The translations under genes were made by a program, and so were the position numbers. The notes under the pieces are model-generated. The model had not been told where the DNA came from and searched no databases. It worked only from the letters and a program-made list of their open reading frames with translations. Of a stretch of DNA of 64,000 nt, positions 6,941 to 58,115 are shown one piece after another. This stretch comes from Octopus sinensis (lineage: Eukaryota). Location of the stretch: positions 52,948,001 through 53,012,000 of the forward strand of contig NC_043008.1 in the NCBI RefSeq assembly GCF_006345805.1. The letters run 5' to 3'. Position 1 is the stretch's first letter, and each line of letters begins with the position of its first letter.

Positions 6941-6967
6941 GTAAAATATATGTGTGTGAGTATATAT

Positions 6968-7433: not shown

Positions 7434-7464
<31 letters not shown>

Positions 7465-8780: not shown

Positions 8781-8814
8781 GTTTGGTAAACTGAACGCCT
8801 CGACAAAATGACGC

Positions 8815-11685: not shown

Positions 11686-11717
<32 letters not shown>

Positions 11718-15330: not shown

Positions 15331-15399
15331 CATGTATAATAATAATTGATGAAGGAAATGGAAAATAGATTTAGCACTAGGCTTTATTCAGTACGATGA

Positions 15400-23904: not shown

Positions 23905-24146
23905 CATTTCTTATTTCTTTATTGTCCACGACGGGCTAAACATAGAGGGGACATACAAAGACAGACAAACGGATTAAGCCGATTACATCGACCACAGTGC
24001 GTAACTGGTACTTAATTTATCGACCCCGAAAGGATGAAAGGCAAAGTCGACCTCAGCGGAATTTGAACTCAGAACGTAACGGCAGATGTAATACCGCTAA
24101 GCATTTCGCCCGGCGTGCTAACGTTTCTGCCAGCTCGCCGCCTTAA
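23905..24146 (-). mobile_element. tRNA-derived SINE family B
   Basis: Reverse complement of AGGCGGCGAGCTGGCAGAAACGTTAGCACGCCGGGCG...GAGTTCAAATTCCGCCGAGGTCGACTTTGCCTTTCATCCTTTCGGGGTCGATAAATTAAGTACC. More than 10 copies, e.g. about 28058-28292 (+), 29693-29912 (-), 43272-43600 (+, dimer), 55895-56322 (-, dimer), 59440-59640 (+). Confidence 0.85.
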
Positions 24147-27808: not shown

Positions 27809-28554
27809 AACTCATCAAATTCCCACCTAATACACGGAATTAAATCATTAGAGCTACTTCATACCAGATCGAAAAGCAGCACAAGAGGTAACGATAATTA
27901 CAAAATGTTATTGGTGTTGCATTTGTATCCATGGAGATTTACCTGTAAATGTCTAAATAGAGAATTATCTCAGACACTAGAAACCGCAAGTAAACGGCTG
28001 GTCACATTCCAGATGTCTTGTAGCTACTAGAAGATACACCAATGTATTTATGTAATTTAAGGCGGCGAGCTGGCAGAATTGTTAGCACGTCGGAGAATGG
28101 CGTAGCCGTATTTCGTCTGCCGTTACGTTCTGAGTTCAAATTCCGTCGAGGTCGACTTTGTCTTTCATCCTTTCGGGGTCGATAAATTAAGTACCAGTTA
28201 CGCACTGGGGGTCGAAATAACCGACTTAATCAGTTTGTCTGTCCTTGTTCGTCCCCTCTGTGTGTAGCCCCTTGTGGGCAGTAAAGAAATAAAAAAAAGT
28301 CCATGTGAATACAACCAATAAATTAAGCCCCAGTTACGCACTGGGGTCTATATAATCGACTTAATCCCTTTGTCTGTCCTTGTTTGTCGCTTCTGTGGAC
28401 AAATTTTAGCTGAATATGATGGATAAGGGTTGGATCTTTGTGGGGCTCATAAAGAAAAATATGTTCTCCAAGTTTTAGGTCGTAGTCGTAACCGGCGGAG
28501 TGCCACAAATATATAAATGTGTATAATGGTTACGTATATGTATTGAGTATGTGT

Positions 28555-29669: not shown

Positions 29670-30994
29670 TACGTAAAGACAGAAGAAATACCTATTTCTT
29701 TACTACACACAAGGGGCTAAACACAGAGGGGACAAACAAGGACAGACAAACGGATTAAGTCGATTATATCGACCCCAGTGCGTAACTGGTACTTAATTTA
29801 TCGACCCCGAAAGGATGAAAGGCAAAGTTGACCTTGGAGGAATTTGAACTCAGAACGTAGCGGCAGACGAAATACCGCTAAGCATTTCACCCGGCGTGCT
29901 AACGATTCTGCCTGAAAACATCGTATAACATCGTAATATCGGCATTAGGTGGCGAGATGGCAGAATCGTTGGTATGTCGGACAAAATGCTCAATGGCATT
30001 TCTTCCGGCTCTTTATTTTCTGAGTTCAAGTCCCATGGAGACTAACTTGGCATTTAATCCCTTCTGGGTCGATAAAAGAAAATACTAGTCAAGTACTGGA
30101 GTCGATGTAATCGACTTGCCTCCTCCTTTCAAAATTGCTGGCATTGAACCCTGCAACAGACTGGTGTCCCTCTCAAGAGCAATGTCGTGATCCCAGTCAC
30201 TTATAAGCCATGGAAACCGGGTAACTGGTCTTATGAGTCCTTGGGCCCAAGAAAAACAAAAATATATTCTATATAAGTGCGTACAGAAGCATATAATGTG
30301 AATAAATATTTATATTTCAAAAATGCTTAAACATTTGGTTTTCACATACATACGTAGATACACTCGCACATCCATCCATCCGTTCATCTATCCATCCATA
30401 CACATATCTATCCATCCATACATAGATACTCTCACATACGCATACTTACTAGAACACCATTGCCAGACTTAGTGAAGTTATGAGATTTAATCTTAATATC
30501 ACAACCGATGTAGAAATATATGAAAGATAGCTTCAGGCTTTATCTGCTAAGTCAGTTCCCCTGCGTGGCCGTAAATGTTAGTAATTGGTAACAGGTTACA
30601 TGAACAATTACAAGACGCTTTACAAGGTTTCCCGTAGAAAATTTACAAGAATTCAAACACTTATAACAGTATGTTGTTTGAAATGGGATGATACCTTGGG
30701 GTGAGGCAAGCAACAAGAATGTATAAGGATAGGATCTCTAATATTGCATCAGTAAGAAATTATTATTAATTGTGCATAAAGACATTTAAGTTTAAATGTA
30801 GTATAGTAGTAATTGCAATAAGGTGTTAAAAAGGTATCTTGGATTTTAATTTTCAGGTACCGAGTATTCTCTTTCAAATACTCAAATGTTCCTTTTACAT
30901 TTGTTAATAGAATGCATTACTGTAAAATAATGTTAGGCATAAATGGCAGTAAGATGATACAATGTAGCTCAATTCAAATTATATGTATTCAAGA

Positions 30995-31270
30995 TCCACA
31001 GCCTACCAACGAAAGTCAGGAACCGTCATGGGAACCACAGTCGTCCCAACATATGCCAAATCTATAGCATGATACCATGAACTGGAAATCTATGAATAAT
31101 CCTCACAAATATGTGGGGATGAATTCAGCTGTTACGTGAAAGAGAACTTGAAGAGACTCTTACATGTCTGCTTCATTTTACGAAGGGAAAATCTCGATAA
31201 ACTGAACCTATTTCAAAATCCCATCAACAACATAACTATCACATTCAATTCTGTATGAAGTTCAGTAATT
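30995..31270 (+). mobile_element. Penelope-like reverse transcriptase remnant
   Basis: YQRKSGTVMGTTVVPTYA (from 31004) resembles the PLE motif YxQxxGTAMGxxxAPxYAN; downstream YVKENLKRLLHVCFIL resembles a decayed WKRYLDDCFI; stops and frameshifts present. Confidence 0.6.
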
Positions 31271-32407
31271 ATAAGCTCTCATTCTTAGATGCACTAATAG
31301 CAAAAAGAAACCCAGCAATACATATTTTAAGCCCGCTGACTCAATGCGATATCTCTTTTTTATCTCATGTCACGTCACTCGAAACATACTCGAAGTAATA
31401 TTAAGCACACTGAGCAAAATGCTTAATGGCATACGTTCCGAGTTCAAATTCTGCAGAGGTCGACTTTGCTTTTCATCCTTTCGGAGTATTCTGTTTTCAG
31501 GTATTTTGTTTTCCGACACTTTCCTGTAGTCCGGCAACGACTGGGTTCCAAATTTGCATTGGTTAAGATATCCAACCTGCTCCTCAGTTTAAACTTATTA
31601 CTAACTTATTTAATGTTGGGAATGAAAAAGAAAATACGTAGTAAGACAAAAAAAGTAATATTAATCAATGAATAACATTGCTTCGATTATTATATTATAG
31701 AATTATTTTAACAAGTAAGGGGGATAACACTGGGCACGTTTTGGTATAATTAGAACCTCATCTGCAGAGTATGTATATATGTCATTGTACTTTTCAAAGT
31801 TGAGGTGAGAGAATCATAAAGAAGATTTTCAATACTGTACATACAATGGTTACTATAGAAAAAACAAAGAACAATTGTTGAGAGAATAAATAACTCAGAT
31901 ATGCGATCTGCATATAAAACAATAACTAACAGAGTATTAAAACGTTAATTAAAGGCAATTAAAGTGTTTAACTTCTGTTAATTTTCTTCTAAGTTGAAAA
32001 TCTTTTACTCTTCACCAGTAACGTTCTACGTTTAATCAATTTACGTTCTACAGTTTGGTATAACAACCGTATAACAATCTCAATGTGATTAAGTATCGTA
32101 TTTGAAAATCTTCTTTATATCATACCTTACACTCTGGATTAAAAAAAAAATGTAAATAAACAGTTGATAATATAAACTTCCCAACTACATGGTTCAGAGT
32201 TCAGTCCCACTGCGTGGAATCTTCGGGAGGTATCTTCCACTACAGTCCCGGAATTGATGTTACCCGTGCTGCAGGTGGTGGCCACATTGAACACTTATAA
32301 GACAGGAAATGAAAGTTGATTGTGAATAAATACTTGTGACTTAGTTGGAGTTTTCTATTGCTTTTCTCTATTAAAATACTGCGTAATGAAATCGGTTTAT
32401 TGTTTTT

Positions 32408-32431
32408 GAATATATATGTATACATATGTAT

Positions 32432-32516
<85 letters not shown>

Positions 32517-32551
32517 ATATAATATAAATATAAATATATATATATATATAC

Positions 32552-32592
<41 letters not shown>

Positions 32593-32603
32593 TAAATATA
32601 TAT

Positions 32604-32686
<83 letters not shown>

Positions 32687-32731
32687 ACATAAATATATAT
32701 ATATATATACATACATACATACATTCATACA
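32408..32731. repeat. (TA)n-rich microsatellite
   Basis: About 320 bp of TA with interruptions. Confidence 0.95.
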
Positions 32732-33320
32732 CTATGGATGGGGTACATGTGCGTGTCAGTGTCCTTATGTTTGTTTCCTATCACTGTTTCACAACCAGTG
32801 TTAGTGTCTTTACATCCTCGTAACCTAGCGGTTCGGAAAAAAGAGACCGATAGAATAAGTAGCAGACATACAAAAAAAAAAATCGACTTAGGAAAAAAAA
32901 AAGGACTGGGGACGATTTACTCGTCTGAACCCTTCAAGGCAGCGTCCCATCAGGGTCGCAGTCTAATGATTGAAACAAGCAAAAACTTAAACGATAAATG
33001 ATTGTCTTTTGATTTTTTTAATCATTATATAAAACAGAAAACATCAAGAAAAAACGTCTTAAATAACAGCTGAGTGAATAAACTGGAAGCCTGGAGCGAC
33101 TTCCAGTTCATTTCTTTTTGTATTGTTCACAATATAAAATAATATAAAACACTAGGTATATGAAATGATGTATTATATGTAAATAATATAACGTTGTTTT
33201 AAACGTATGAGTCTGTTATAATGTTATTAATTATATATATATTATTATTATTTTTATTGTTATTTTTGTTATTATTTTGCGTCTCTCACTGATATTGTCT
33301 TTCTTTCTCTGTCACACCCT

Positions 33321-33366
<46 letters not shown>

Positions 33367-33467
33367 TCATCATCATCATCATCATCATCATGCTGAACCG
33401 TTAATCCCTACACTTGATTTCTCTCCCTGGTTACTTTTTCTTTCTCTCCATTTTTTCCCTCTCAACC

Positions 33468-33503
33468 CTTTCTGTAGAAGGGCGTAGGTTCGAAACGTCA
33501 AAG
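33468..33503 (+). ncRNA. Minimal type-I hammerhead-like motif in a Penelope-type repeat
   Basis: CTTT / CTGTAGA / A / GGGC-GTAG-GTTC / GAAA-CG-TC / AAAG: stem I 4 bp, stem II 4 bp (two G.U), palindromic ACGT helix III. Core has U at the usually invariant A6. Confidence 0.5.
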
Positions 33504-33592
33504 ACTTTTCCATTCTTCCCGAGCGTCAAACACATACACCTTCTTGTTGTTTCCACACTTGTCTGTCCTCGTCTTTTTTTCCAGTAAATTTG

Positions 33593-33596
33593 AGCT

Positions 33597-33641
<45 letters not shown>

Positions 33642-33642
33642 C

Positions 33643-33674
<32 letters not shown>

Positions 33675-33797
33675 CTCTCTCTATATATATATATATATAA
33701 TATGTTTTATATTATTAATTGCATATACTTATATATATTTATGAATTTATATGTGAGTGTATGTATATAGATATATATGTATATACATACATACATC

Positions 33798-33879
<82 letters not shown>

Positions 33880-33928
33880 GTACGTGTTTTATCTTTTTAT
33901 CTCTTTGCGTATGTGTGTTTCTATGTAT

Positions 33929-34002
<74 letters not shown>

Positions 34003-34026
34003 ATATATATTTGCATATGTATATGT
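33593..34026. repeat. Compound TA/TG/TC microsatellite block
   Basis: Seen directly. Confidence 0.95.
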
Positions 34027-34347
34027 ATACGTGTTGTGCGCGTGTTTGTAATCTTTTGTCTCATTGTTCTGAAGTCTTTTAATCTATCGTTCATTTATAA
34101 GTTCATCACATTAATGATACGAGATTGCTCAGTGTCTTTAGATTCGTACGTATTGTCTTAGCATCTCTCGAACTTATTATAAAATCCATTTGAATTTCTA
34201 TTTCCATTTCGCCTTGGAAATACATTCTCTCTCTTCATTTGAATAATTAAATGGGTTATCGTAAAATAGAATCTGCTGCCATCTTTTTTTGCCTTTGTTA
34301 TTGTTGCTTATCAAGTTGGCGAATTTCACAAATTGACTGAAAGATAT

Positions 34348-34405
34348 CTAGATTGTAATTTTCGTCGAAACTTCTGTCTGAAATTGCTCTCTGCTGCTGC
34401 TACTG

Positions 34406-34486
<81 letters not shown>

Positions 34487-37400
34487 TTGTTAGATGTTGT
34501 GTCTTCTAAATTAGAAATATCGTTTAAATCGTTTGACTGATAATTCTCCAAAGGGTCAGTTTTGTTCGTCAGGTATTTACTACTTAGCGTTGTCTCCATT
34601 GTCGTTCCATTATTTGCCATTTCTTCCATATAAATCATGGTGCTAATTGTTAAATTGCTGAACGAATTTCCTTTGAGATTTGGTTCTTCCAGAATTTTTG
34701 TCTCGGAGCTCGGAATTTTCGCTTCAGTTGATAATTCTAAATCGCTATTATTTCTGTTGATGCCTACACCGTTCGTCAGCGTTCCATTTGTGACAATATC
34801 ATTTATTATTTCTTCGTTCCATAGATTCCAATTTTTACTGAGATTTGCTGATATGCTTTGGTTAAAATTTGAATCATTGTAAACCCCAGAATTATTGGGG
34901 GCAAATTCTGTTATTCCTTTTTTAAACTCAGAATCTTGTCGGGATATTCCAATCGCTGTGTCAGGTGTTGTCGAATTGTCTTCGTTTGGAAGCGCAATTT
35001 TAAAAACCGAATTGCCCTCTTTATGCTCTAACGAACTTTGATTCTCTCTCGAGATATTTATTCGATTAAAGGTATCATTCCCTTTATACAAGAACTCATC
35101 CAAGGAATTATTAATGTTTAGAAAAGTTCTGTTCATCGACAAAAATGTTTTATTCAGTAGATTTTCTTCCGGATGGAGGGGTCTGTTTTTCATGTTTTGT
35201 TCAAAACTAGAATTGTGTTGACGATCGAAATGTGTGTTATTTCCTAAATCTGTTGAATTGTCGATAGTCTGTTGTACAATCTTCGAATTGTCGCTTTTAT
35301 CTACAGGTTTATAGTCCTCGGTAGATGTATCAATTTCTGTTTGTTTCTGTTGATTAAATTTAACACTATTAGCTGATTGTAAATTTAATGATGAATCAGT
35401 TATATTTTCTGTATCAGTATGAGAAACGTCTGATTCATTTCTTGTATGGTTTTGATAAATCATCAAATCCGAAGCAGACACGTCCGTGTGTCCTTGCTGG
35501 AATGTATCGATCTCTGAGGAAAATGATGAAAATACATTAGAAGAAGAGATAAAAGAGGTCACATTTTTGGTGATGCTTTCAGTAAAATTGTTATTCGAAT
35601 ATTTAATTTCATTTGGCGTGATTTGTGAATCAAGATCTGTAATATTATTCGATTCTGTTTCATTCAAGAATCCTAAAATGCTTTCAGTATCATCTAGGCT
35701 TTTGCTATCATTGGATTCGAAACTGAGGTAGTTCTCTGTTGTAGTGTCATTAGTCACGTAATCATTGGTCAATGGTTTGCTATCATTTGAAATTAAACTA
35801 ATGCTTGGAGTAGATTGTTCGTCAACCTTATGATTACCGCTTCTGTCTTTCATCTTTAACAACGGTGGCGCAACCAATTCGACCGAAGAGCTCTCATTAA
35901 TGATGTTCTCTGATCTACTTGGTTGCTGATCATAATTCGAAATTGCTTCTTTTGAATTATGCGAAACTTTTCTACTTTTATTTTTAGAGAATTCTGGATT
36001 TATCGAAGCATTTCGATCTGTGTTGATAACTTCACTGAAAGAAGAATTAAGTTCCGGATAAGCATCATTTTCACTTATGTTGTGAGAATTGTTGATTTTA
36101 CTTTCAAAGCCGAGTGAATTTATTTTTCCGATGTTAGAGCGATCAAACACAATATGTGGCAAGTAAGCGTTTATTGATTGCGACGTATTTGACTGTTGTA
36201 GCACTGAAACACTTTTATTGGAGATCATTAAACTTGGCTCATTTTCGCTTAGCTCTTTATCTGCTTCAAACTTTATATTTGCTGGACTCAGAGTTACGTC
36301 AACAAAGTCAGCTGTTGTGAAATTGGTATTTTTTATTGCCTTTTTAGAAATCATAGAATTATTCATTAAGTTTTCCACACTAACGCTCGTGTCTTCAGAA
36401 TAATAATTGTCATTATTAGTCACAGAAGTAATATTGTTTTCAGAATTCTGTCTCGGCAAGAGCCTAGTTTCATTAACACGGTTTGCTCTTTCGCCTGATT
36501 CTGTCAGTTTAAGTAATAATTTTAATTTACTTTTCAATGAAGCCTCATAGTCAATATCACCTCCTACAATAGAAATACTTTCGTCAGTTTTTATCACTGA
36601 ATCATGGCTATTTGGTTCACTTTGGTTGGTATTTAAATTTGTAATGTTATTATTTGGATTGGCATTTGTTGAATTTATTTCTGCTGACGTATTGCTTATT
36701 GATGTTTGTATTGGCTCTGAAGTTTCCGAAGTGTTAACGAAATGATCGATTTGGTCGAAAGAGTCAACAGTAAAATTTAAATTGTCCGTCTGCGTAAAGT
36801 TACTGTTATCTACAATAACCCTTGTTATGTTATCCCCGTCAGACACGTAAGCAGCTGTTGTTGGTTGTTCAAGAGATGTTATGGTCTCCTGTTCAGACAA
36901 ACTCGTAGCTTCTAAGAGGTTTTCTTCATTCGAAGAGTTCCCTCGATCTTCTTTGAGATTGTCCGGGCTTAAGTTTTCTTCGAGTGTACTATTTCTTTCA
37001 ACTGATTTCTGTAGTGACACCATATTACTTGTAACACCAGCAAATATCTGCGGATTTTCTCCAATTTCATCCAAATGCTTATCTTCATCTGCAATTCTCT
37101 TTTGTATTACTGTTTCACTCGTATCATTTAGACCTTCTACTCTGGGTTCGTCATATTTTCTAACTTCTTGTGAACTATTTTCGGAGGTATTATTATGGTG
37201 TATTATCCCCGTCGCGTTATTTTCGTCCAGTTCATCATCATTTATGGATTGCTTCGTGTCATTTATTTGCAACACAAAGTCACCTGAGTCCTGCAACTCA
37301 GCTTCACTTATAGATTTAGTAGAAAGATTTCCACCTTGAATACTAATAGAAACGGCCTTCGTCAAGTTCCTGTTATTGTAAGGCATGGGATAATCATTAG

Positions 37401-39854
37401 ATGACATAAAATCATTGATATAATTATTATTATTGTCATCATCTTCCACCGGATTGTCATTCTCTGGAAATATCAGTGATATTTGAGTAGGTAGCTGGTT
37501 ATAATTTTGATTCGAAGTAAATAATTGTTTTAGTATGTTTGTCGAAAGGACGGATTTTGCATTTGTTTGTAAGTTTCTCACCGGGTTTGAATTTACTAAA
37601 TTTTTTTCAAAAGATTTGTTATCACGATAATAATTTTCCCTTTGTGTGTCCCCTGAACCAACATTCTGGTAGTTCAGTCCTCCAGACTCTGGAAATAACT
37701 GTTTGTATTTCCTTTCCTTTGAATTATTTTCTCTCGGTAAAAGCAGCATCGGTAACTCATTTCTGACAGTATTTTTCGCGCTTTCCCTAAACCCTATTTT
37801 AGATGTTGTTGGGTGAAAATCATTTTTATACGAGTAAAGTTTATTTCCATCATTATAATTCAGAGAACTACTCTTTCTTTGTTGATTCAGAGACTGATCT
37901 AATCTATTCCTTTGTTCTAGTAAGGATTTGACCAAACTATTAGATTCGGAGTGGCTATCCTCTATATCATGTTTCAAAGAATTTCTGCTGATGTAATGAG
38001 TGGGATTTTTCTTTAAAATATTTTCGGAGTCATTACTCTTGAAAACAGGAGTGTTTGTTGTTAAATTATCTTCGAGGTGCGTATAATATTTCGAAAAGAT
38101 TTCCTTAGTTATTGCTCCATTGGAGTTCGAAGACATTTTTAACGATTTATCAAACTGTAAATGATTGCTAAGATTAGGATTTAATACTATTTCAGAGGAA
38201 TTCTCTGTCACAATCGAAGTTTGTTTAGAATCTTTCAAAGAATTTATAATTTTATTGCTATGATCTTTGACAATACCACTTAAGTGTGTTGTAGTTTCTG
38301 AATTTCCATAAGAAGAATGAGATTTTAATCCTCCAATTATTCCATTATTGTCTATTGTGTTATTTATATTAGGTAAGTATGTATTTTCAGAAAGGCTTGA
38401 ATTAACCAGTAACGCATTAGATTCATTGTATATTTTACAGTTCAGATCAGTATCGTTGCAACTTATTAAAGTCTGTACGTCTTCTATTTCCTTTTGAGTT
38501 TGGTTTGATATCAAAGGAAAAAGTTCACTACTAACTCGAGCATCTGTTGTGTTTCCTGAGATAAATCTGTGGTCATCAGATACAATACGATGGTCTGTGT
38601 TTGCTTGAGCTCCAGCTGAAGATTCGGAGTCATTTCCGTTATTTGATTTCACTGCATTACTTTTAGTTTTGGTTCTCTGTTCCCAGCGAATAATATCCTT
38701 TGCTATCAACGACGATAGTAACTCTGTCTGGTTTGGCAGGTTTGGTGGATATGTTTTATCGATTCTATCAAGTAATATCGATTCCCCAGTCTTTTGTAAG
38801 AGTTCGTCTGAAGTACTGTATAAGTTACCTGATGGCAACACATTTTCCTTATCGTCTTCAACATTCTTGATGCCATAATCAATGGTAGTCTTCGAACTAA
38901 AATACATCTTTGAATTTTTTTTGTTCCCAGGTAAAACCGTAATATAATTATTACCAGTTGTCGTTTTTTCAGTGTCACCGAATTGCCAGAGTTTGTCTTG
39001 GTTTTCTGATATTTGTTTGGTTACTTTTACATTCTGAATAGTCGTCTCATTGCCAGAATCGTTGCCTGAAGATCGTTCCCGTTTATTGAGATGCTTTTCA
39101 TATAAAGATTCTGTTGATTGATTGGGTGAGGAGTTTCTTACTTCTTCTTCATCATTTATCACATCCTTCATATCTAAAAAGATAATATCATTGACCCCAT
39201 GTAAATTCGTAGAAGATTTTGTCATTTCTTTCTGTAAACGTTCGGATTCTTGACCATGGATTTCTATTTCGGCCAATTTTGTCGTGTCGGAGTTTTGGTC
39301 GGCAATTTCCTTAGTGGATCTCACGACATTCCAACTGGTTGGAGTAAACGTTTTAATGTTTTCACGGGGCTTTGTTCGAGTGGTCGGACGAATATTATGG
39401 TTTGAAATTTTTGGAGCTTTAAATTGTGTGTAAGGGTTATTTATAATTTTTGTTTTCTTAACCATTTTTGGATATTTCCTTTCTTTAAAAGAATTGGATT
39501 CTGATAATTTAGTTTTCAGTTTATCGTCAGCAAGATTGTTCTCATTATTCCAATAAGTAATTTCGTTGTTTTTAACTTCCATTGGCAAATTCTGAACCTT
39601 TGATTGTTTTTGTCTGTATTTTGACTTCCTTTTAACTTTGATTTGATCAAATGTCATTTCTCGTTTGCCTTGTACACAATTAACCATTCGGGGCCAGTTA
39701 CAAACGAATGTAAAATGATCAAAGAAAAGGCCTTTTGGACAAATTTTCGGAAAAGGAACCCACATGTAGCAATGATAAAAAATATCGCAGTTGTACGGAT
39801 CACTCATAAAACCGAAAGCCGATTCACATTTTACCGTAGATTTCTGCACCACTC
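34348..39854 (-). CDS. Chitin-binding secreted protein, large 3' coding exon (second CBM14 plus N/S/T-rich tail)
   Basis: Poly-pyrimidine TTCTAG acceptor at 39856-39855; frame open for 1834 codons in AT-rich DNA; CESAFG...NCDIFYHC...ICPKGLFFD...CNWPRMVNC is a six-Cys peritrophin-A pattern (39676-39828); stop TAG at 34348-34350. An undetected splice donor before the stop cannot be excluded. Confidence 0.88.
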
Positions 39855-40407
39855 CTAGAATAAAAAACAAAAAACAAAACAAAACAATAATAACGTATTC
39901 AAAAATGAAGTAATTTATATGAAGATATTTTTATCTATAAATGATTATTTTTACTCGATCTTAAGTTGTTTACGTTGATTACGCTTTTAACGAACAGCTA
40001 CTTAACCAATTCTTGTGAGAAAATTATGTTACATTGTTAAGCTTTATCGATCTACAATAGAATTGATTTCTCGTATTAGCACAGTCTTTTTTAAATGGTT
40101 ATTTTTTTTTTAATGACTTAGTCGTACGAAGAAGCTTTTGCAGAGCTTCCAGGAATGGTGGCGGCGGCGGTGTAGAAAATGCCAACCTGAAATTAGAGAA
40201 CTGGCCGGAATGTTTCCCACAAGGTAAATTCCGCTAAAGACATCCAGTGACAAGGTGGTAGGGTTTAACCGGACGAGACTTCTTGAGGAGGTGAAGGGTG
40301 CAACCTCTGCTATTTAATTACTGACATTTGTGCAAAACTCAATAAATTAATTACCAAATTATAGATTATTGAATCATTAAAAGAAAAGAGAAACAAACGA
40401 TAATAAC

Positions 40408-40851
40408 CTTCATCCTGTTGATTTCCTTTCAACGAAGAAAATGTATCTGTGTCAACATCTCCGGAAAATTCAGCTCCCAACTGATTATCATCTTTGGAAA
40501 CGCCGCCGTTCGTGCGTTGAAGAACATCATTACTACTAAATGGTAACAGTTCTTCATTTTCATCTTGAAAGCTGTTGGATTTATAAGGTCTTATATCAAA
40601 TGGGTCTAAAACATTTCTATTGTCTTCAAATTGTAGATATTCACTGTCGACTTTGGAATTTTGGCAAGGAACCAAGGCAGGCCAGTTACATATCTTATGG
40701 CGAGGATCAAACCGGAGTTCAGGAGGACAGGACTTTGAATAATACCTTCCACCCGAAAGGCAGTGGAAATATCTTTTACAGTTGTTAGGGTCTGGAATAA
40801 GGGAGTTAAACACACCTGGGGGACAAACGAAAGCAGTAACATGTAGAAATC
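40408..40851 (-). CDS. Chitin-binding secreted protein, exon with signal-peptide end and first CBM14
   Basis: TTTCAG acceptor at 40853-40852; reads xFLHVTA-FVCPPG...NNCKRYFHCLSGG...SCPPELRFD...ICNWPALVPC (six Cys, 40664-40825); phase-1 donor GAAG|GTTATT at 40408/40407 joins the phase-1 acceptor at 39854 in frame (553-bp intron). Confidence 0.88.
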
Positions 40852-40963
40852 CTGAAATGAGAAAACAAATGTTTTGTTAGTAATAACGCAATTTAATTTC
40901 GCATTATTTTATTAAACTAGGAAAAAAGAGAGTAACGCCATTTTGCCTGGTTTAATAATTTAG

Positions 40964-41102
40964 ATTTGTAAAAATATTTTTGTTGCTTTGAGACCGCGAC
41001 CCGTTCACTGACAAAGCTTCGTGCTGCATCTCTGAGATGCAGCACGAAGTTTTGTCAGTGAACGGGTCGCGGTCTCAAAGCGACGAAAATATTTTGACAA
41101 AT
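40964..41102. repeat. Near-perfect palindrome with 1-nt centre
   Basis: 40985-41032 pairs with 41034-41081 (48 bp, one mismatch) around T41033; pairing extends to 69-bp arms with four mismatches. Confidence 0.95.
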
Positions 41103-42301
41103 TAAACTTAAATGTTGAAGTGAATCTAACGGTTTTTGTGTGTTTCCTAAATGACTTATAAACACCGTCCATGCGGCAATTGTTTTCGTTCCAGCACACG
41201 ATTTCAGATCAAGTCACTCGCTATGCAAGTACATCTCAATAATTTACAATGTTAAATCAAATCCTTTTGCATATTTAATTTAGTGTACCTAGGTTCCGAG
41301 TTCAAATATCAACGCAACTGATTTTGCCTTTCATTCGTTTGGTAGTGATAAAATAAATACTCTTTACTCGTTTCAGTCATGTGACTGTGGCCATGCTGGA
41401 GCACCGCCTTAAGTCGAGCAAATCGACACCAGGAAACAGGAAGAAAGAGTGAGAGAAAGTTGTAGCGAAAGAGTACAACAGGGGTCGCCACCACCCCTGC
41501 CGGAGCCTCGTGGAACTTTAGGTGTTTTCGCTCAATAATCACACACAACACCCGGTCTGGGAATCGAAACCGCGATCCTCCGACAGCGAGTCCGCTGCCC
41601 TAACCATTGGGCCATTGTGCCTCCACGCTGCTGGTGCCTATAGTAAAACGGATAATTATCATCAGTATTATGAAGGTGAGATAGGTCAATCGTTATTACG
41701 TCGGTTAAGTTGCTTATCTGCATTATTCCCAGCTCTTTACATTCCGAATTCAAATACCGCCGAGGTGACCTTTGCCCTTTAACCTTTCGGGAGTCAATAA
41801 AACAAGTACCAGTGGAGCATACATTTATCCTTCTCACCTTTAAATTTGCTGACCTTGAACCAAAATTAGAAGGGATTATTGTATTACTTTTTATAATTTA
41901 CTTGTTTCTCTCACTGGACTACAGCCATGTCGGAGCACCGTCTTGAGGGGTCGAGTCGAGCACATCGACTTTTTTTAACGCTTAGTACTTATTCCATCAG
42001 TCTCTTTTTGCTAAATCGCTAAGTTACTGGAGCGCAAACAAACATGTTACGATTGTCAAGCAGTGGTGGTGGTGGTGGTGGTGGTGGTGGTGGTGGGGCA
42101 AACACAAAGTCACACAGACGCGCCCCACCCATCCACATACACACACACACACACACACAGATATTCGACGGGCTTCTTTCAGTTTCCGCCTGCCAAATCT
42201 ACTCGTAAGGTTTTGGTCAACCTGGAGCTGCAGTAGAGGACACTTGTGCAAGGTGCCATGCAGTGGGACTGAACCCGGAACCATGTGGCTGAGAAGCAAA
42301 C

Positions 42302-42394
<93 letters not shown>

Positions 42395-42396
42395 TG

Positions 42397-42860
42397 TAAG
42401 GCGGCGAGCTGGCAGAATCGTATCGTCGTCAGCAAGCTGGACGAAATGCTTGGTATTTCGTCTGCCGCTACGTTCTGAGTTCAAATTCCGCCGAGGTCGA
42501 CTTTGCCTGTCATCCTTTCGGAGTCGATAGATTAAGTACCTATTTCTTTATTACCCACAAAGGGCTAAACACAGAGGGGACAAACAAGGACAGACATAGG
42601 TATTAAGTCGATTACATCGACCCCAGTGCGTAACTGGTACTTAATTTATCGACCCCGAAAGGATGAAAGGCAAAGTCGACCTCGGCGGAATTTGAACTCA
42701 GAACGTAATGGCAGACGAAATACGGCTACGCATTTCACCCGACGTGCTACCGTTTCTGCCAGTTCGCCGCCCTTAGATTAAGTGCCAGTTACGCACTGGG
42801 GTCGACGCAATCGACTTACTCGTTCCTCGAAATTGCTGGCCTTGTGCCAAAAATTGAAAT
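42397..42860. mobile_element. SINE-B (minus, 42541-42774) nested in SINE-B (plus)
   Basis: The plus copy is interrupted after AGATTAAGTACC (42529-42540) and resumes at AGATTAAGTGCC (42775-42786), a 12-bp TSD with one mismatch. Confidence 0.8.
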
Positions 42861-43171
42861 AATAATAATTATTATTATCTGTATTCCACGGCCAATGTCA
42901 TCAAAATGTCAGTGAAAGTGTTTTTCCACAGAAACTGGAAACGTTAATTGTATAATTACTTAACATTCTCCTTGAAAAAAAAAACAAAACAAAAAAACTA
43001 GCCAGACATTTTGATTGATAAAAATCATTATTGTATTTTATCAATAGACGTTCTAGACATTTATGATTGATCTGAGAATTTAAGTAGGTAAGTTTCTTAA
43101 TTCTCTCACGTAAAGTATTTGGTCGTAATGAGGAAACCTTCTATGTCGAGTCGTGCAAAGTAGTTTCAAGT

Positions 43172-43271
43172 NNNNNNNNNNNNNNNNNNNNNNNNNNNNN
43201 NNNNNNNNNNNNNNNNNNNNNNNNNNNNNNNNNNNNNNNNNNNNNNNNNNNNNNNNNNNNNNNNNNNNNNN
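43172..43271. other. Assembly gap (100 N)
   Basis: Run of N; true length unknown. Confidence 1.
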
Positions 43272-43941
43272 AGTTCAAATTCCGCCGAGGTTGACTTTGC
43301 CTTTCATCCTTTCGGGGTCGATTAAATAAGTGCCAGTTACGCAGCGGGGTCGATACAATCGGCTTAATCTGTTTGTCTGTCCTTGTTTGTCCTCTCTGTG
43401 TTTAGCCCCTTGTGGGTAGTAAAGAAACAGGTATCTCGTCTGCCGCTCCGTTCTGAGTTCAAATTCCGCTGAGGTTGACTTTGCTTTTCATTCTTTCGGG
43501 GGTCGATAAGTACCAGTTACGTACAGGGGTCAATGTAATCGACTTAATCCCTTTGTCTGTCCTTGTTTGTCCACTCCGTGTTTATCCCCCTTATGGGCAA
43601 TAAATAAATAACATATTTATCCGAGTTAATGTTTCCGTCATACTCCACCAACTCTATTTCCATCATGCTCCCCAGACCATCACAGAATAGCCGCTTTGTT
43701 TCATTGTTGGCAGTAATTTGTAGAAAGCAGGATCTCAAGGTTTTCTGTGATTTTACGCTAAGTCCGCCTTCAGATTGACACACAATACGGGCTTTTTAAA
43801 ATTTGGGAAAATTACAAGGCTTCTTTTGTACGTGGCATGTTTAAAAGGCGGTGCTCCAGCATGGCCACAGTCAGATGACTGAAACAAGTAAAAGAATGAA
43901 AGAGTAAACAGTCACATATTAACCTGAAACGTAATATTATT

Positions 43942-44025
<84 letters not shown>

Positions 44026-44114
44026 TAGGGAGAATTCATTAAAAAACAAGACGAAGGCAGGTGGTGTAGACAACAAACAGATGTATTAGTATAACGCTCG
44101 GGAAGTGAGAAACT

Positions 44115-44150
44115 CTTTTACGTTTCGAGCCGACGCTCTTCCACATAAAG
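44115..44150 (-). ncRNA. Minimal type-I hammerhead-like motif, same family as 33468
   Basis: Minus strand CTTT / ATGTGGA / A / GAGC-GTCG-GCTC / GAAA-CG-TA / AAAG. The downstream 90 nt align with 33504-33595, and both end at a (TA)n tract. Confidence 0.45.
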
Positions 44151-44534
44151 GAATGCAAATATGATGGAATCTCCCATTTCAGCTTTTGCTGAATGACTAC
44201 AATTGATTTCTTTACAATTATCGAATATGTGTGTTGCCCATTGGTTCACTCCCGTCATCAAATCGTTGTGTAAACAGGTGCACGGAGTCAAACGTCAGAT
44301 GTTGAAGTGATCGCAGATTAGCGTGAAATGAAGTGTTTTGCTCAAGAACGCAATACACCACCCAGTTCAGGAATTGAAACTGCAACCTTGCCATCGTGAG
44401 TGCAATACTCTAAATACTAGTCCAAGCGCCGTCACACATACATATAGAGACACACGCGTGTGTGTAATAATGCGCTTATCTTATAGAATACTAAGATGCC
44501 CTATATTGTGCTAATATGCAAAAAAAAATAACTA

Positions 44535-44866
44535 TGAAGTCGCATGGCTCAGTGGTTAGATCATCAGGGTACAATCATGAGTTAGTAAGTTCGATTCTCG
44601 CACCGGGCTGTACGTTATGTTCTTGAGCAAGACACTTTATTTTGCGTTGCTCCAGTTCACTCAGCTGTAGAAATTAGTTGCGACGTCACAGGTGCCAAGC
44701 TGTATCGGCCCCTTTGCTTTTCCTTTGGATAACATCAGTGGCATGGACAGAGGGAGTCTGGTATGCATGGGCGATTGCTGATCTTCCATAACCAATCTTG
44801 CCCGGACTTGTGCCTCAGAGGGGAACTTTCTATGTCCAATCTCATAGTCAGTCATTACCGAATGGT
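44535..44866 (+). mobile_element. tRNA-derived SINE (additional family)
   Basis: A-box-like TGGCTCAGTGGTTAG, B-box-like AGTTCGATTCTC, then TTCTTGAGCAAGACACTT core-like segment. Confidence 0.65.
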
Positions 44867-45246
44867 GACGTCCTGTACCCATATATGTATGTATATATGT
44901 GTGGGGGTGTAGGTGTGTGTGTATTATATATTTTTCTTATATATGTGTGCGTGTGTGTGTGTGTGTTGTGTGTGTGTGTGTGTGTGTGTGTATGTTTATA
45001 CGTTGTAACCAGTTAATAAAGCAAGCGAGGCCACATCTCAGTAAGTGGTGAGGGGAGCAATAATGCCGTCTAGCGGAACGCCCCGAAACTGCGCGCACTC
45101 TCCTGGTGACCCCATAAGCTTGCTCGCATCTGATATGCGGAGCTTTCAACTGCTAACATTTGCATCTGTAAGTTGCTTCCAAAAAAAATAATAATAATGA
45201 TAATAATAATATACACATAAATCCGTATATGTGTATACATGTGCAG

Positions 45247-46430
<1,184 letters not shown>

Positions 46431-47139
46431 ATCTCTATGTTCCTATATATCTCTTCATTTCGCTATCTAACTATATGTATGTATGTGTGTGTGTGTGTGT
46501 GTGTGTGCATTCTCTTGGTTATCTAGCTATCTATTTTTATATATCAATGCAGTGATTATTTAGGCGGCGAGCTGGCAGAAATGTTAGCAGGCCGGTCGAA
46601 ATGTTTAGCGACATTTCTGAGTTCTGTGTTCAAATTCCGCCGGGGTCTACTTTTCCTTGCATCATTTCTGGGTCGATAAATTAAGTACCAGTTGCTCCCC
46701 TCCCCTAAAATTTCCGGCCTTGTGCCTAGAGAAGAAAAGAATATAGTGATTACAACTATCTATAAGTATATCTCCTCTCAATCGATTTACTCTGCGCCTC
46801 CCTCCCCCTCCTTACTCTTACACTCTATTGATTCTTTTTCTCTTTTCCTTTCTCTCTTTCACTTAACTTCCAATGTCTCTCTCGCTTTCTCCTCGCGTCT
46901 TTCTCCCTCTCTCTTCCTCCTCTCTCTCCCCTGCCTCCCCCCCTCTCTCTCTCTCACCAATATGCCACACGTGCATAATGCTTTCTGTATAAAAGCACAT
47001 AATACTCAGACGAATACAGGTGTTTGTCTTCTTGTGGGAAAGAGAGCGATGTGAGTTTGCGAGTTTGCGTTCATTAGTATTTGCTTCTATTGTTGAGTTG
47101 AGTTGGGTTGGGTTGAGTTGTGACTCCCCCCTTCGGTCA

Positions 47140-47712
47140 TAAATGACCATCATCATCATCATTGTTCGACCGTGGTCGAGACAATGGAATTTACCATGTT
47201 GCGCCAGACTTCACGGTCCATCATAGCATTACGGAGGACCTGTTGCTGGATGCCTGTATCCCTGGAGATTACATCAGAGTAGGAGAGTGTGCGCCCTCTG
47301 GTGTTGCGAGTAGATGGCTTCCAGAGGAGAAGAGTAGAAATTACTTCTTTTTCAGCTCTACAACAATGTCCAGCAAACTGGACTCTCCTACCTTTCACAA
47401 GAGATGACACAGGTGGTAATTTCCCATATATTTGCATTTTAGTTGGATGGCGCCTCCACGAGAGATTTTGAGCTCTCATAAGGAGGCGAGTGTAGGTTCC
47501 ATCCAACCGCCTCTCAAGCTTCTTTGATAACGTCCAGGTTTCTGAGCCATATAGTAGGATTGGTTCGACTGTGGCTTTGAATATTTCAAGTTTGAAGTCT
47601 CTACTTAGATTTGATGGGATTGCACCTAGAAAGTTCCCCTCCGAGGCACATGTCCGGGCAAGGTTGTGTATGGAAGACCAACAATCGCCCATGCATACCA
47701 GCCTCTGAGATA
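47140..47712 (-). mobile_element. RTE/RTE-X-type LINE 3' fragment with (TGA)n tail
   Basis: 177-codon open frame KLEIFKATVEPILLYGSETWTLSKKLERRLDGTYTRLL...VQFAGHC...MMDREVWR, then stop and TGATGATGA. Confidence 0.85.
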
Positions 47713-48130
47713 AATTTGGTTGCTCTTTCTAGCAAATCTAGCAAACTGGCACAAAAAAGAACACAGTAAACTTCCATTGAGCAGTGAAAGATCTAACGTT
47801 TCGGTCAGAGTTCTTCTTCAAGGAGAGGTTGATAGAAGTCCGAACGTTGAAGTTTCCAATACTCACAACAAAGACACTGTTCGCTTTTTCGTCGTTATCA
47901 CCACACACTCATACACGCACACACACATGTGGGGAGTAGGGTGAGTGTGTGTGTGCGCGTGCGTGCGTATGTGTGTATGCGTGTGCGTGTCTCCGTGGGC
48001 GCGTTCCCCCAAAGTTTGTGCTATTCAGTTCGATCGCATTGTAGAAGTGTTCAGATTTCAAAAGCCTGTTATTGTATTTACAAGGCAAAAACCTCAACGG
48101 AATGGAAATCACATCAGCCGAGTGTAACCG

Positions 48131-48141
48131 ATAATAATAAC

Positions 48142-48184
<43 letters not shown>

Positions 48185-48343
48185 TAATAATAATAATAAT
48201 AATGATGATGATGATGATGATGATGATAATAATAATAATAATAATAATAATAATATAATAATAATGATAATGATGATGATGATGATAATAATAATAAAAT
48301 AATAATAATAATATAATAATAATATAATATAATAATGATGATG

Positions 48344-48377
<34 letters not shown>

Positions 48378-48472
48378 TGATGATGATGAGATGATGATGA
48401 TAATAATAATAATAATAATAATAATAATAGCAATAATAATAACAATAATAACAATAATATAATAATAGTAGC

Positions 48473-48504
<32 letters not shown>

Positions 48505-48615
48505 TAATAATAATAATAATAACAATAATAACAATAATATAATAATAATAATAATAACAATAACAATAATAATAATAATAATAACAATAATAACAATAAT
48601 AATAATAATAATAAC

Positions 48616-48651
<36 letters not shown>

Positions 48652-48676
48652 GATAATAACGATGATGATGATGATG

Positions 48677-48737
<61 letters not shown>

Positions 48738-48917
48738 TGATGATAATAATGATGATGAAGATGATGATAATAATAATAATAATAATAATAATGATAATAA
48801 TGATGATGAAGATGATGATAATAATAATAATAATAATAATAATGATGATAATAATAATGATAATAATAATAACAACAACAACAACAACAACAACAACAAC
48901 CACAACAACAATAATAA
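48131..48917. repeat. About 790-bp compound (AAT)n/(GAT)n/(AAC)n trinucleotide tract
   Basis: Seen directly; produces poly-I/L/N artefact ORFs. Confidence 0.95.

Positions 48918-58042: not shown

Positions 58043-58043
<1 letters not shown>

Positions 58044-58115
<72 letters not shown>

What the first reader, a model, noticed from the sequence alone, without database searches (positions are those of the whole stretch)
34348..40851. About 2000-aa chitin-binding protein with a single 5.5-kb exon encoding a dense N-glycosylation tail
Seen: signal-peptide end, CBM14, acidic linker, CBM14, a K/R-rich patch, then about 1650 aa of acidic Asn/Ser/Thr-rich non-repetitive sequence with roughly 80 N-x-S/T sequons (hand count) and only two Cys. 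Established: peritrophin-A domains bind chitin, and their mucin-like partners are usually PTS-rich and O-glycosylated. Inference: an N-glycan-based mucin-like or matrix protein for a chitinous structure (beak, radula, sucker cuticle, gut lining), possibly related to shell-matrix proteins. I do not recognise a named gene.
Basis: partly seen in the sequence, partly recalled or inferred. Interest (0 to 1): 0.7.

Follow-up and report, generated by a model that had tools for sequence, protein, structure and literature searches.

The report
Octopus chitin-binding protein with N-glycan-site-rich tail
This is a real, uncharacterised octopus gene for a roughly 2000-residue secreted protein: two chitin-gripping domains followed by a long floppy acidic tail with more conserved N-glycan attachment sites than chance gives, so it probably coats a chitinous surface with sugar chains.

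Summary
On the minus strand, a 444-nt exon (40851-40408) and a 5,507-nt exon (39854-34348) join in phase to give 1,982 residues. The order is end of signal peptide, CBM14, acidic linker (pI 4.1), CBM14, K/R patch (pI 10.1), then a 1,767-residue non-repetitive acidic Ser/Asn/Thr-rich tail with exactly 80 sequons, two Cys and a 31-Ser run.

The tail is coding:
- The ORF is intact in the window and in O. bimaculoides.
- All indels against O. bimaculoides preserve the frame.
- Tail dN/dS is 0.40.

The sequons look selected:
- There are 78 against 48.8 +/- 5.7 expected from composition. N-x-T is doubled, and reversed or shifted motifs are not enriched.
- 74 of 80 are conserved in O. bimaculoides.
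- Key sequon positions change about five times less often than other Asn/Ser/Thr.

An exhaustive HMMER search with the first 1,200 tail residues found only the O. bimaculoides orthologue.

Both public models found are incomplete and carry composition-driven automatic names. The start-codon exon lies outside the window.

Verdict: a lineage-restricted peritrophin-like protein whose mucin-type domain is replaced by an N-glycan-site-rich disordered tail. Tissue, glycan occupancy and chitin binding are untested. I found no evidence of a link to shell-matrix Pif/BMSP proteins.

The parts
40408..40851 (-). Exon 2 of the gene (444 nt). It encodes the end of the signal peptide, CBM14 number 1 and most of the acidic linker.
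   Evidence: Acceptor ttcag|G and donor GAAG|gttatt read. Phase-1 join to the next exon gives an open frame. The O. vulgaris model CAI9731322.1 uses the same junctions.
40664..40825 (-). CBM14 (peritrophin-A) chitin-binding domain 1, with six Cys and a C-N-W-P motif.
   Evidence: Pfam PF01607, E 5.3e-11, 42.9 bits against a cut-off of 22.1. PDB match to the chitin-binding module of chitinase 6g9c, E 1.4e-8, and to chitotriosidase 6so0. Coordinates.
39855..40407 (-). Intron of 553 nt between the two coding exons, with gt..ag ends.
34348..39854 (-). Exon 3 (5,507 nt including the TAG stop at 34348-34350). It encodes the end of the linker, CBM14 number 2, the K/R patch and the whole tail.
   Evidence: ORF and exon boundary. 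The ORF is intact in O. bimaculoides, L002:9557-15064. All indels against O. bimaculoides preserve the frame. dN/dS is 0.37.
39676..39828 (-). CBM14 chitin-binding domain 2, with six Cys and a C-N-W-P motif.
   Evidence: Pfam PF01607, E 2.7e-8, 34.2 bits. PDB match to tachycitin 1dqc, E 2.5e-5. dN/dS 0.03 against O. bimaculoides.
39397..39675 (-). Basic K/R-rich patch of 93 aa (23 K/R against 9 D/E, pI 10.1) with no sequons.
34486..39396 (-). Main tail of 1,637 aa. It is acidic (pI 4.8), Ser/Asn/Thr-rich and non-repetitive, and is predicted to be disordered. It carries nearly all of the 80 sequons, whose density rises to about 6 per 100 aa over the last 1,000 residues of the protein. It also holds a conserved C-x6-C pair.
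   Evidence: Composition and sequon count. Enrichment against shuffles. Conservation. No self-similarity. AlphaFold2 mean pLDDT 32-33. Only the O. bimaculoides orthologue was found among 1.84 billion representatives.
34393..34485 (-). Run of 31 Ser (AGC/AGT repeat) near the C-terminus. Its length differs between species.
   Evidence: The run is 30 nt shorter in O. bimaculoides and 15 nt longer in O. vulgaris.
34351..34392 (-). Conserved C-terminal 14 residues, REQFQTEVSTKITI.
   Evidence: The O. bimaculoides ORF ends ...REQFQTEVSTKITV.

Best explanation
The region holds exons 2 and 3 of a three-exon Octopus gene. The product is a secreted protein of about 2,000 residues.

**Proposed mechanism.** The N-terminal pair of disulfide-knotted CBM14 domains, set apart by a roughly 90-residue acidic linker, anchors the protein to chitin fibrils. 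A short basic patch follows. The remaining 1,700 or so residues form an intrinsically disordered, net-acidic chain that carries up to about 80 N-glycans. That is 4.5 sites per 100 residues overall and about 6 per 100 over the last 1,000 residues. The tail would project from the chitin as a hydrated, protease-shielded, lubricating or anti-fouling glycan brush.

**Functional analogy.** This is the job done by the O-glycosylated mucin domains of insect peritrophic-matrix mucins, but built on N-linked sites.

**Shown here**
- The gene structure.
- Coding constraint over the whole tail.
- CBM14 identity.
- Statistical enrichment and preferential conservation of the sequons.
- Lack of any detectable fold, repeat or homologue in the tail.

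**Inferred, not shown**
- Secretion. The signal-peptide start is seen only in the two orthologous loci.
- Chitin binding.
- Glycan occupancy.
- The brush function and the tissue.
For: **Gene structure and domains**
- Splice junctions and an open joined frame.
- Both CBM14 domains score above the Pfam gathering threshold, and the PDB matches are to chitin-binding modules.
- Exon 1, MHSN(I/V)LHQLFVLTTG, is conserved in O. vulgaris and O. bimaculoides at 97% nucleotide identity. With the start of exon 2 it forms a hydrophobic stretch, mean Kyte-Doolittle 1.6, ending V-T-A|F.

**The tail is coding**
- Chance probability of the ORF is about 1e-63.
- Indels against O. bimaculoides are +3, -3, -3 and -30 nt.
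- dN/dS is 0.40 for the tail and 0.03 for CBM14 number 2.

**The sequons look selected**
- 78 observed against 48.8 +/- 5.7 expected, z 5.2, reached by 0 of 2,000 shuffles.
- N-x-T is 38 against 19, z 4.9.
- Controls are not enriched: [ST]-x-N 54 against 48.8, N-[ST] 49 against 50.6, N-x-x-[ST] 40 against 50.4, D-x-[ST] 24 against 23.5.
- The same enrichment appears in O. bimaculoides, 78 against 51.6.
- 74 of 80 sequons are conserved.
- Key sequon positions changed at 2 of 155 sites. The rest of the tail changed at 163 of 1,596 (p 3.5e-5), and non-sequon N/S/T at 29 of 470 (p 0.017).

**Disorder**
- The charge-hydropathy plot places the tail on the disordered side.
- AlphaFold2 gives mean pLDDT 32-33 with no residue at 70 or above.
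Against: - No expression, proteomic or glycoproteomic data could be consulted, so occupancy of the sequons, the tissue and the chitin partner are unknown.
- The signal-peptide exon is not in the window. The h-region contains His, Gln and Thr, and no signal-peptide predictor was available.
- The AlphaFold runs used a single sequence, which gives low confidence for many real folds too.
- Ser and Thr make up 23% of the tail, so O-glycosylation or phosphorylation may matter as much as N-glycans.
- The conservation test against other N/S/T sites is only modestly significant (p 0.017). It rests on one species pair at dS 0.10.
- The O. vulgaris assembly carries a 1-nt insertion that breaks the ORF in mid-tail. 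If it is real, it shows that the distal half can be lost in at least one genome.
Confidence: 0.55

Rival explanations
1. The protein is an acidic phosphoprotein or calcium-binding matrix protein of a mineralised chitinous structure, such as the stylet, the statolith or another shell-field derivative. In this reading the tail's Asp/Glu, scattered Ser and the 31-Ser run act as a polyanion that controls mineral, and the glycans are secondary.
For: - The tail is net acidic, 249 D+E against 175 K+R, pI about 4.9.
- There is a poly-Ser run near the C-terminus.
- The architecture of chitin binder followed by an acidic region recalls Pif97/Pif80 as described in PMC11291548.
Against: - There is no VWA domain and no RX[KR]R processing site.
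- S-x-E, the Golgi-kinase motif, is not enriched: 24 against 19.5, z 1.1.
- Acidity is moderate, at 14% D+E, far below typical Asp-rich shell proteins (the comparison value is my background knowledge).
- The poly-Ser length drifts between species like a microsatellite.
- This reading leaves the specific N-x-T enrichment unexplained.
Confidence: 0.13
2. Only the CBM14 pair is functional, for example as a chitin-recognising lectin or a simple cuticle protein. The tail is then a fast-evolving, largely neutral disordered spacer, and its sequon excess is a by-product of passing through the secretory pathway rather than the basis of function.
For: - Tail dN/dS of 0.40 is more than ten times that of CBM14 number 2.
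- No homologue of the tail exists outside Octopus.
- The tail has no fold and no repeats.
- The O. vulgaris assembly tolerates, or appears to tolerate, a mid-tail frameshift.
Against: - dN/dS is below 1 in all six blocks, and every indel against O. bimaculoides preserves the frame across 5.5 kb.
- Sequons are 60% above the composition expectation, with the efficient N-x-T form doubled.
- Key sequon positions are the slowest-evolving sites of the tail.
- The C-terminal 14 residues and the C-x6-C pair are conserved.
Confidence: 0.17
3. The protein is a secreted immune or anti-microbial factor. It would use the CBM14 domains to bind chitin of fungi, parasites or crustacean prey rather than the animal's own chitin.
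For: The best solved-structure matches of the two domains include tachycitin, an antimicrobial chitin-binding peptide, and the chitin-binding module of a chitinase deposited as 'immunomodulatory active chitinase'. Fast evolution of the tail is compatible with a host-pathogen interface.
Against: - These matches reflect only the shared CBM14 fold.
- There is no catalytic or effector domain.
- No block of the tail has dN/dS above 1.
- A 1,700-residue glycan-site-rich tail is unusual for a recognition lectin (inference).
Confidence: 0.1
4. The long ORF is not a real coding exon. It would be a pseudogene, a chance ORF, or an artefact of joining unrelated exons.
For: The two public gene models disagree with each other and with the model proposed here. 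The O. vulgaris assembly has a frameshift.
Against: - Chance probability of the ORF is about 1e-63.
- The ORF is intact in two species, and in the third it is broken only by a single inserted base.
- Indels are frame-preserving and dN/dS is 0.37.
- The exon region is more conserved than its flanks, about 94-95% against 85-89% identity with O. bimaculoides.
- Splice phases match.
Confidence: 0.02

Closest known systems
Invertebrate intestinal mucins and peritrophins of insect peritrophic matrix (CBM14 domains plus mucin domains)
   Same: Both are secreted proteins with six-Cys peritrophin-A (CBM14) chitin anchors joined to a long, disordered, heavily glycosylatable region. Both are presumed to form a hydrated protective layer on a chitin scaffold. 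The insect proteins are cited from background knowledge and the CBM14 identity was tested here.
   Different: - The tail is not Pro/Thr/Ser-rich. Pro is 3.2% and [ST]P is 8 against 12.7 expected.
- It is instead Asn/Ser-rich, with an excess of conserved N-x-S/T sites.
- It is non-repetitive.
- It has only two CBM14 domains, both at the N-terminus.
- No sequence relationship beyond the CBM14 fold was detected.
Pif/BMSP shell-matrix proteins of molluscs (PMC11291548)
   Same: These are molluscan secreted proteins that combine CBM14 chitin binding with a long, compositionally biased acidic C-terminal part.
   Different: There is no VWA domain, which defines the family in PMC11291548. There is no RX[KR]R cleavage site, no laminin-G domain and no homologue among bivalves or gastropods.
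Squid beak chitin-binding proteins (the CBPs described with the His-rich beak proteins; reviewed in PMC11931252)
   Same: They are cephalopod proteins that bind the chitin scaffold of a hard tissue.
   Different: As far as I know those are short proteins without a 1,700-residue glycan-site-rich tail.
Public models XP_014775964.1 (O. bimaculoides, 'putative uncharacterized protein DDB_G0282133') and CAI9731322.1 (O. vulgaris, 'serine-rich adhesin for platelets-like')
   Same: They are true orthologues, at 90% and 98% identity, from syntenic loci.
   Different: - Both models are incomplete.
- The O. bimaculoides model starts inside the tail, so it lacks both CBM14 domains, and it ends in a different 3' exon.
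- The O. vulgaris model stops at residue 1,055 because of a 1-nt insertion in that assembly, and the remainder is called as a separate 896-aa gene.
- The names reflect composition, not homology. An exhaustive search found no relative in Dictyostelium or bacteria.

Membership tests
CBM14 / peritrophin-A chitin-binding proteins | A domain matching Pfam PF01607 above the gathering score | tested here: met
   Two domains, 42.9 and 34.2 bits against a cut-off of 22.1.
CBM14 / peritrophin-A chitin-binding proteins | Six-cysteine register (three disulfides) and a conserved aromatic residue in the C-x-W/Y-P motif | tested here: met
   Cys at 9, 24, 30, 41, 54, 62 and at 157, 170, 176, 186, 199, 207. 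CNWP is present in both domains.
CBM14 / peritrophin-A chitin-binding proteins | Secretion by way of an N-terminal signal peptide | tested here: inconclusive
   Exon 1 is absent from the window. The orthologous exon 1 plus the start of exon 2 gives a hydrophobic leader ending VTA|F. No predictor was available.
CBM14 / peritrophin-A chitin-binding proteins | Binds chitin | not testable with these tools
   This needs a pull-down with recombinant domains.
Mucin-type peritrophins (invertebrate intestinal mucin) | Pro/Thr/Ser-rich, usually repetitive, O-glycosylated mucin domain | tested here: not met
   Pro is 3.2% and [ST]P is 8 against 12.7 expected. There are no internal repeats.
Pif/BMSP shell-matrix family | A VWA domain N-terminal to the CBM14 domain or domains | tested here: not met
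   Pfam finds only CBM_14 in the window-encoded 1,982 residues. Exon 1 of the orthologues encodes only 14 residues.
Pif/BMSP shell-matrix family | Furin-type RX[KR]R site that separates the chitin-binding part from the acidic part | tested here: not met
   No RX[KR]R motif is present.
Gel-forming mucins | VWD, C8, TIL or cystine-knot oligomerisation domains | tested here: not met
   No such Pfam hits. The tail has only two Cys.
Serine-rich adhesin for platelets (SraP) and Dictyostelium DDB_G0282133, the names given to the public models | Detectable sequence homology | tested here: not met
   phmmer of 1,200 tail residues against 1.84 billion representatives returned only the O. bimaculoides orthologue.

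The most novel reading that the evidence does not exclude
This would be a previously undescribed class of extracellular matrix protein: a chitin-anchored 'N-mucin'. Its hydrated glycan brush would be built from about 80 N-linked glycans on a non-repetitive disordered chain instead of O-glycans on Pro/Thr/Ser repeats. The tail would have arisen within octopods and be specific to an octopus chitinous lining such as the shed sucker cuticle or the foregut cuticle.
Probability: 0.3. Interest if true: 0.6.

Novelty: new variant of a known kind. Interest (0 to 1): 0.45.

Why it matters
Cephalopod chitinous materials (beak, radula, sucker lining, gut cuticle, stylets) are models for bio-inspired materials. 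For octopus, none of my seven literature searches turned up a characterised protein partner of chitin or any mention of this gene.

This gene gives a concrete candidate with an unusual design: a standard chitin anchor fused to a very long disordered chain whose conserved feature is its set of N-glycosylation sites. If the sites are occupied, their density would be comparable to known glycan shields, which I put at roughly 4-5 sites per 100 residues from background knowledge. That would show that a mucin-like function can be built on N-glycans.

It is also a clear case of a taxonomically restricted, fast-evolving coding region under measurable constraint. The analysis further shows that both public gene models found here are incomplete, which matters for anyone using those proteomes in mass spectrometry.

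Tried and rejected
- **Signal-peptide exon.** I looked for it in the window by exact peptide words, blastn, blastn-short, tblastn and a 3-mismatch pattern search. It is absent, although it is 97% conserved between the other two species. It must therefore lie more than 23 kb upstream or be missing from this assembly.
- **Word-indexed search with the N-terminal 283 residues.** It returned nothing, not even the near-identical O. vulgaris protein. I treat this as a failed search, not as evidence of absence. Orthologues of the CBM14 pair in other cephalopods therefore remain unexamined.
- **Literature searches.** I searched by accession, by the automatic names and by topic. Nothing on this gene turned up.
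- **Internal repeats, furin sites, RGD and S-x-E enrichment.** None found.
- **Pfam on the tail and on the O. vulgaris distal ORF.** No domain found.
- **Rfam on 30000-45000, both strands.** Nothing found.
- **Plus-strand ORFs across the region.** They are at most 152 aa. I judged them to be antisense by-products of the composition and did not test them against Pfam.
- **Chance ORF or pseudogene.** Rejected (see rival 4).
Full report
**What is there**

The finding lies on the minus strand. An acceptor (ttcag|G) at 40851 and a donor (GAAG|gttatt) after 40408 bound a 444-nt exon. After a 553-nt intron, an acceptor (ttctag|GA) at 39854 opens a 5,507-nt exon that runs without a stop to the TAG at 34350-34348. 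Both junctions are in phase 1 and create a Gly codon. The joined product is 1,982 residues.

The O. vulgaris protein model CAI9731322.1 uses exactly these junctions. It adds a 14-residue first exon, MHSNILHQLFVLTT. That exon is 97% conserved in O. bimaculoides, 7.6 kb upstream of exon 2 there and 19 kb upstream in O. vulgaris. It is not in the window. The full protein is therefore about 1,997 residues, and the window holds exons 2 and 3.

The window is 98.4-98.8% identical to O. vulgaris OX597825.1 across the gene. It is about 95% identical to O. bimaculoides CM046612.1. It therefore comes from a member of the O. vulgaris species complex, possibly O. sinensis. That last point is an inference.

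**Anatomy of the protein**

| Residues | Feature | Evidence |
|---|---|---|
| 1-8 | End of the leader...FLHVTAF | |
| 9-62 | CBM14 number 1, Pfam E 5e-11 | |
| 63-155 | Acidic linker, 19 D/E against 8 K/R, pI 4.1 | |
| 157-207 | CBM14 number 2, Pfam E 3e-8 | |
| 208-300 | Basic patch, 23 K/R, pI 10.1 | |
| 301-1937 | Main tail, pI 4.8 | |
| 1938-1968 | Run of 31 Ser | |
| 1969-1982 | Conserved C-terminus | |

- Each CBM14 has six Cys and a C-N-W-P motif.
- The closest solved structures by sequence are chitin-binding modules: a GH18 chitinase (6g9c, E 1.4e-8), chitotriosidase (6so0) and tachycitin (1dqc).
- The 1,767-residue tail, counted from residue 216, is S 14.5%, N 13.4%, T 8.3%, E 7.6%, D 6.5% and P 3.2%.
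- The tail has two Cys in a conserved C-x6-C.
- The tail has no internal repeat detectable by self-BLASTP and no Pfam domain.
- Overall it sits on the disordered side of the charge-hydropathy boundary. Two of its 100-residue blocks score as folded-like.
- AlphaFold2 in single-sequence mode gives mean pLDDT 32 and 33 for the two halves, with no residue at 70 or above. Single-sequence predictions are weak evidence, but they agree with the composition.

**Is the tail really coding?**

Yes.
- In this composition (A 39%, T 26%), a codon is a stop with probability 0.076. An 1,844-codon open frame therefore has probability about 1e-63. The other two frames of the same strand hold 122 and 254 stops.
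- The next-longest ORFs in the window are about 300 aa and are translations of simple repeats.
- The orthologous ORF is intact in O. bimaculoides at 1,835 codons.
- Its indels relative to the window are +3, -3 and -3 nt, plus -30 nt in the Ser run, so all preserve the frame.
- Nei-Gojobori dN/dS against O. bimaculoides is 0.03 for CBM14 number 2 and 0.40 for the tail. The six 300-codon blocks range from 0.24 to 0.60, with dS about 0.10.
- The exon is more conserved than its flanks, at about 94-95% against 85-89% identity with O. bimaculoides.

It cannot be tested directly without RNA data. It is, however, hard to reconcile with constraint that extends to the last 14 residues, which are identical but for one residue in O. 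bimaculoides.

**Are the sequons more than composition?**

The hand count of about 80 is exact.

| Motif (poly-Ser run excluded) | Observed | Expected from shuffles |
|---|---|---|
| N-x(not P)-S/T | 78 | 48.8 +/- 5.7 (z 5.2, 0 of 2,000 shuffles reach it) |
| N-x-T | 38 | 19.0 (z 4.9) |
| N-x-S | 40 | 29.7 (z 2.2) |
| [ST]-x-N (control) | 54 | 48.8 |
| N-[ST] (control) | 49 | 50.6 |
| N-x-x-[ST] (control) | 40 | 50.4 |
| D-x-[ST] (control) | 24 | 23.5 |
| Q-x-[ST] (control) | 19 | 14.6 |

- The excess lies mainly in N-x-T, the form that established glycobiology says is more efficiently glycosylated.
- O. bimaculoides shows the same excess, 78 against 51.6.
- 74 of the 80 sites are sequons in O. 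bimaculoides too.
- The Asn and Ser/Thr of sequons changed at 2 of 155 positions.
- The rest of the tail changed at 163 of 1,596 positions (Fisher p 3.5e-5).
- Asn/Ser/Thr outside sequons changed at 29 of 470 positions (p 0.017).
- S-x-E is not enriched, and there is no furin-type site or RGD.

The one feature of the tail that stands out statistically and evolutionarily is therefore the N-glycosylation motif.

**Relatives**

- A word-indexed search of 5.8 billion proteins with the whole ORF found only the two Octopus orthologues.
- An exhaustive phmmer of tail residues 216-1415 against 1.84 billion cluster representatives found only the O. bimaculoides protein.
- The automatic names of the public models are 'putative uncharacterized protein DDB_G0282133' and 'serine-rich adhesin for platelets-like'. 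They reflect composition, not homology.
- The O. bimaculoides RefSeq model starts inside the tail, lacks both CBM14 domains and ends in a different 3' exon.
- The O. vulgaris model ends at residue 1,055, and the rest is called as a separate 896-aa gene. The cause is a single inserted T in that assembly, AATAATA[T]CCTCC at exon-3 nucleotide 2667.
- I cannot tell whether that base is an assembly error or a real allele. The downstream 913-codon frame is still open, so any disruption is recent.
- A search with the N-terminal 283 residues failed its own positive control. Orthologues of the CBM14 pair in other cephalopods therefore remain unexamined.

**How it most likely works**

- Shown: two bona fide CBM14 modules, a leader compatible with secretion, and a long constrained chain without a detectable fold whose conserved motif is N-x-S/T.
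- Inferred: the CBM14 pair pins the protein to chitin. The tail, carrying up to about 80 N-glycans plus a net negative charge, forms a hydrated, protease-resistant brush over the chitin surface. Its density is about 6 sites per 100 residues over the last 1,000 residues.
- This is the role that O-glycosylated mucin domains play in insect peritrophic-matrix mucins (background knowledge).
- Candidate sites in an octopus are the sucker lining, the foregut cuticle, the beak/radula complex and the stylets (background knowledge). Nothing here discriminates among them.
- I put about 0.55 on this explanation as a whole. The components score higher: real gene about 0.97, chitin binding about 0.8, substantial N-glycosylation about 0.7.

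**Rivals**

- A phospho-Ser/Ca-binding matrix protein of a mineralised structure (0.13). The acidity and poly-Ser run fit. There is no VWA domain, no cleavage site and no S-x-E excess, and the N-x-T excess goes unexplained.
- A functional CBM14 pair with an essentially neutral spacer tail (0.17). The high dN/dS and lineage restriction fit. The frame preservation, the sequon excess and the sequon conservation do not.
- A secreted chitin-recognising immune factor (0.10).
- A non-coding artefact (0.02).

**Comparison with known families**

- It is a member of the CBM14/peritrophin-A superfamily, because the domain and Cys-register tests are met.
- It is not a classical mucin-type peritrophin (no PTS repeats) and not a gel-forming mucin.
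- It is not a Pif/BMSP protein, because it has no VWA domain and no furin site. The family definition comes from PMC11291548.
- It works like a peritrophic mucin in outline, but with a different glycan chemistry implied.
- I file it as a new variant of a known kind.

**Surroundings**

- The gene is not part of a CBM14 cluster within the window.
- Downstream of it, at lower coordinates, lies a histone H3/H4/H2A/H2B cluster at 1564-9838.
- The upstream 23 kb is repeat-rich and not collinear with O. vulgaris beyond 43171.
- Rfam finds nothing at 30000-45000.

**Limits**

There are no transcript, proteome or glycan data and no signal-peptide predictor. Other cephalopod genomes were not available. 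The evolutionary tests rest on three closely related species.

Noticed in passing
window 1564-9838: A core histone gene cluster. H3 is at 1564-1974 (-), H4 lies within 2017-2484 (+), H2A is at 8815-9192 (-) and H2B is at 9461-9838 (+). It lies about 25 kb downstream of the chitin-binding gene.
   Followed up: partly
window 40956-41110: A near-perfect 155-nt palindrome with 77-nt arms, 91% complementary, and 1 nt between the arms. It sits in intron 1, about 105 nt upstream of the exon-2 acceptor. It is single-copy in the window. One arm matches exactly in O. vulgaris, and there is no exact match in O. bimaculoides. It could be a small hairpin element or a MITE remnant. Its function is unknown.
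   Followed up: partly
L001 (O. vulgaris OX597825.1) about 32.7 kb, equivalent to window about 37188: A single inserted T (AATAATA[T]CCTCC) splits the orthologous 5.5-kb ORF into ORFs of 902 and 913 codons. The public annotation therefore has two genes, of 1,055 aa and 896 aa. Whether it is an assembly error or a real truncating allele is undecided.
   Followed up: partly
L002 (O. bimaculoides CM046612.1) 10001-16997: RefSeq model XP_014775964.1 starts at an internal Met within the tail, so it lacks both CBM14 domains. It replaces the last 100 or so residues, including the poly-Ser run, with a different 3' exon. Yet exon 1, exon 2 and the full ORF with the conserved C-terminus are all present in that locus.
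   Followed up: partly
window 34393-34485: The AGC/AGT poly-Ser tract of 31 codons varies in length between species. It is 30 nt shorter in O. bimaculoides and 15 nt longer in O. vulgaris, so it behaves like a coding microsatellite.
   Followed up: yes
window beyond 43171 up to 64000, against L001 10001-26250: Intron 1 differs greatly in length and content between species: 7.6 kb in O. bimaculoides, 19 kb in O. vulgaris and more than 23 kb here. Collinearity with O. vulgaris stops at window 43171, and only dispersed repeats match beyond that point.
   Followed up: partly
window about 23912-24144, 28059-28291, 29685-29912, 42531-42771, 43272-43611, 56091-56324 and others: A dispersed repeat of about 230 bp, SINE-like, is present in many copies on both strands of the window and of the O. 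vulgaris locus at 75-93% identity. Long microsatellite blocks (TA, CA, GA, ATAC-type) flank the gene at about 33720-34050. Others lie at 45000-48900 and 57800-59300.
   Followed up: no
protein residues 613-620 (window about 38438-38461): The only two Cys of the tail form a C-x6-C motif (SCNDTDLNCK) that overlaps two sequons. It is conserved in all three species. It may be a small disulfide loop.
   Followed up: no
tool behaviour: The word-indexed protein search with the N-terminal 283 residues did not return the near-identical O. vulgaris protein that one search had found. Negative results from that tool for short queries should not be read as absence.
   Followed up: no
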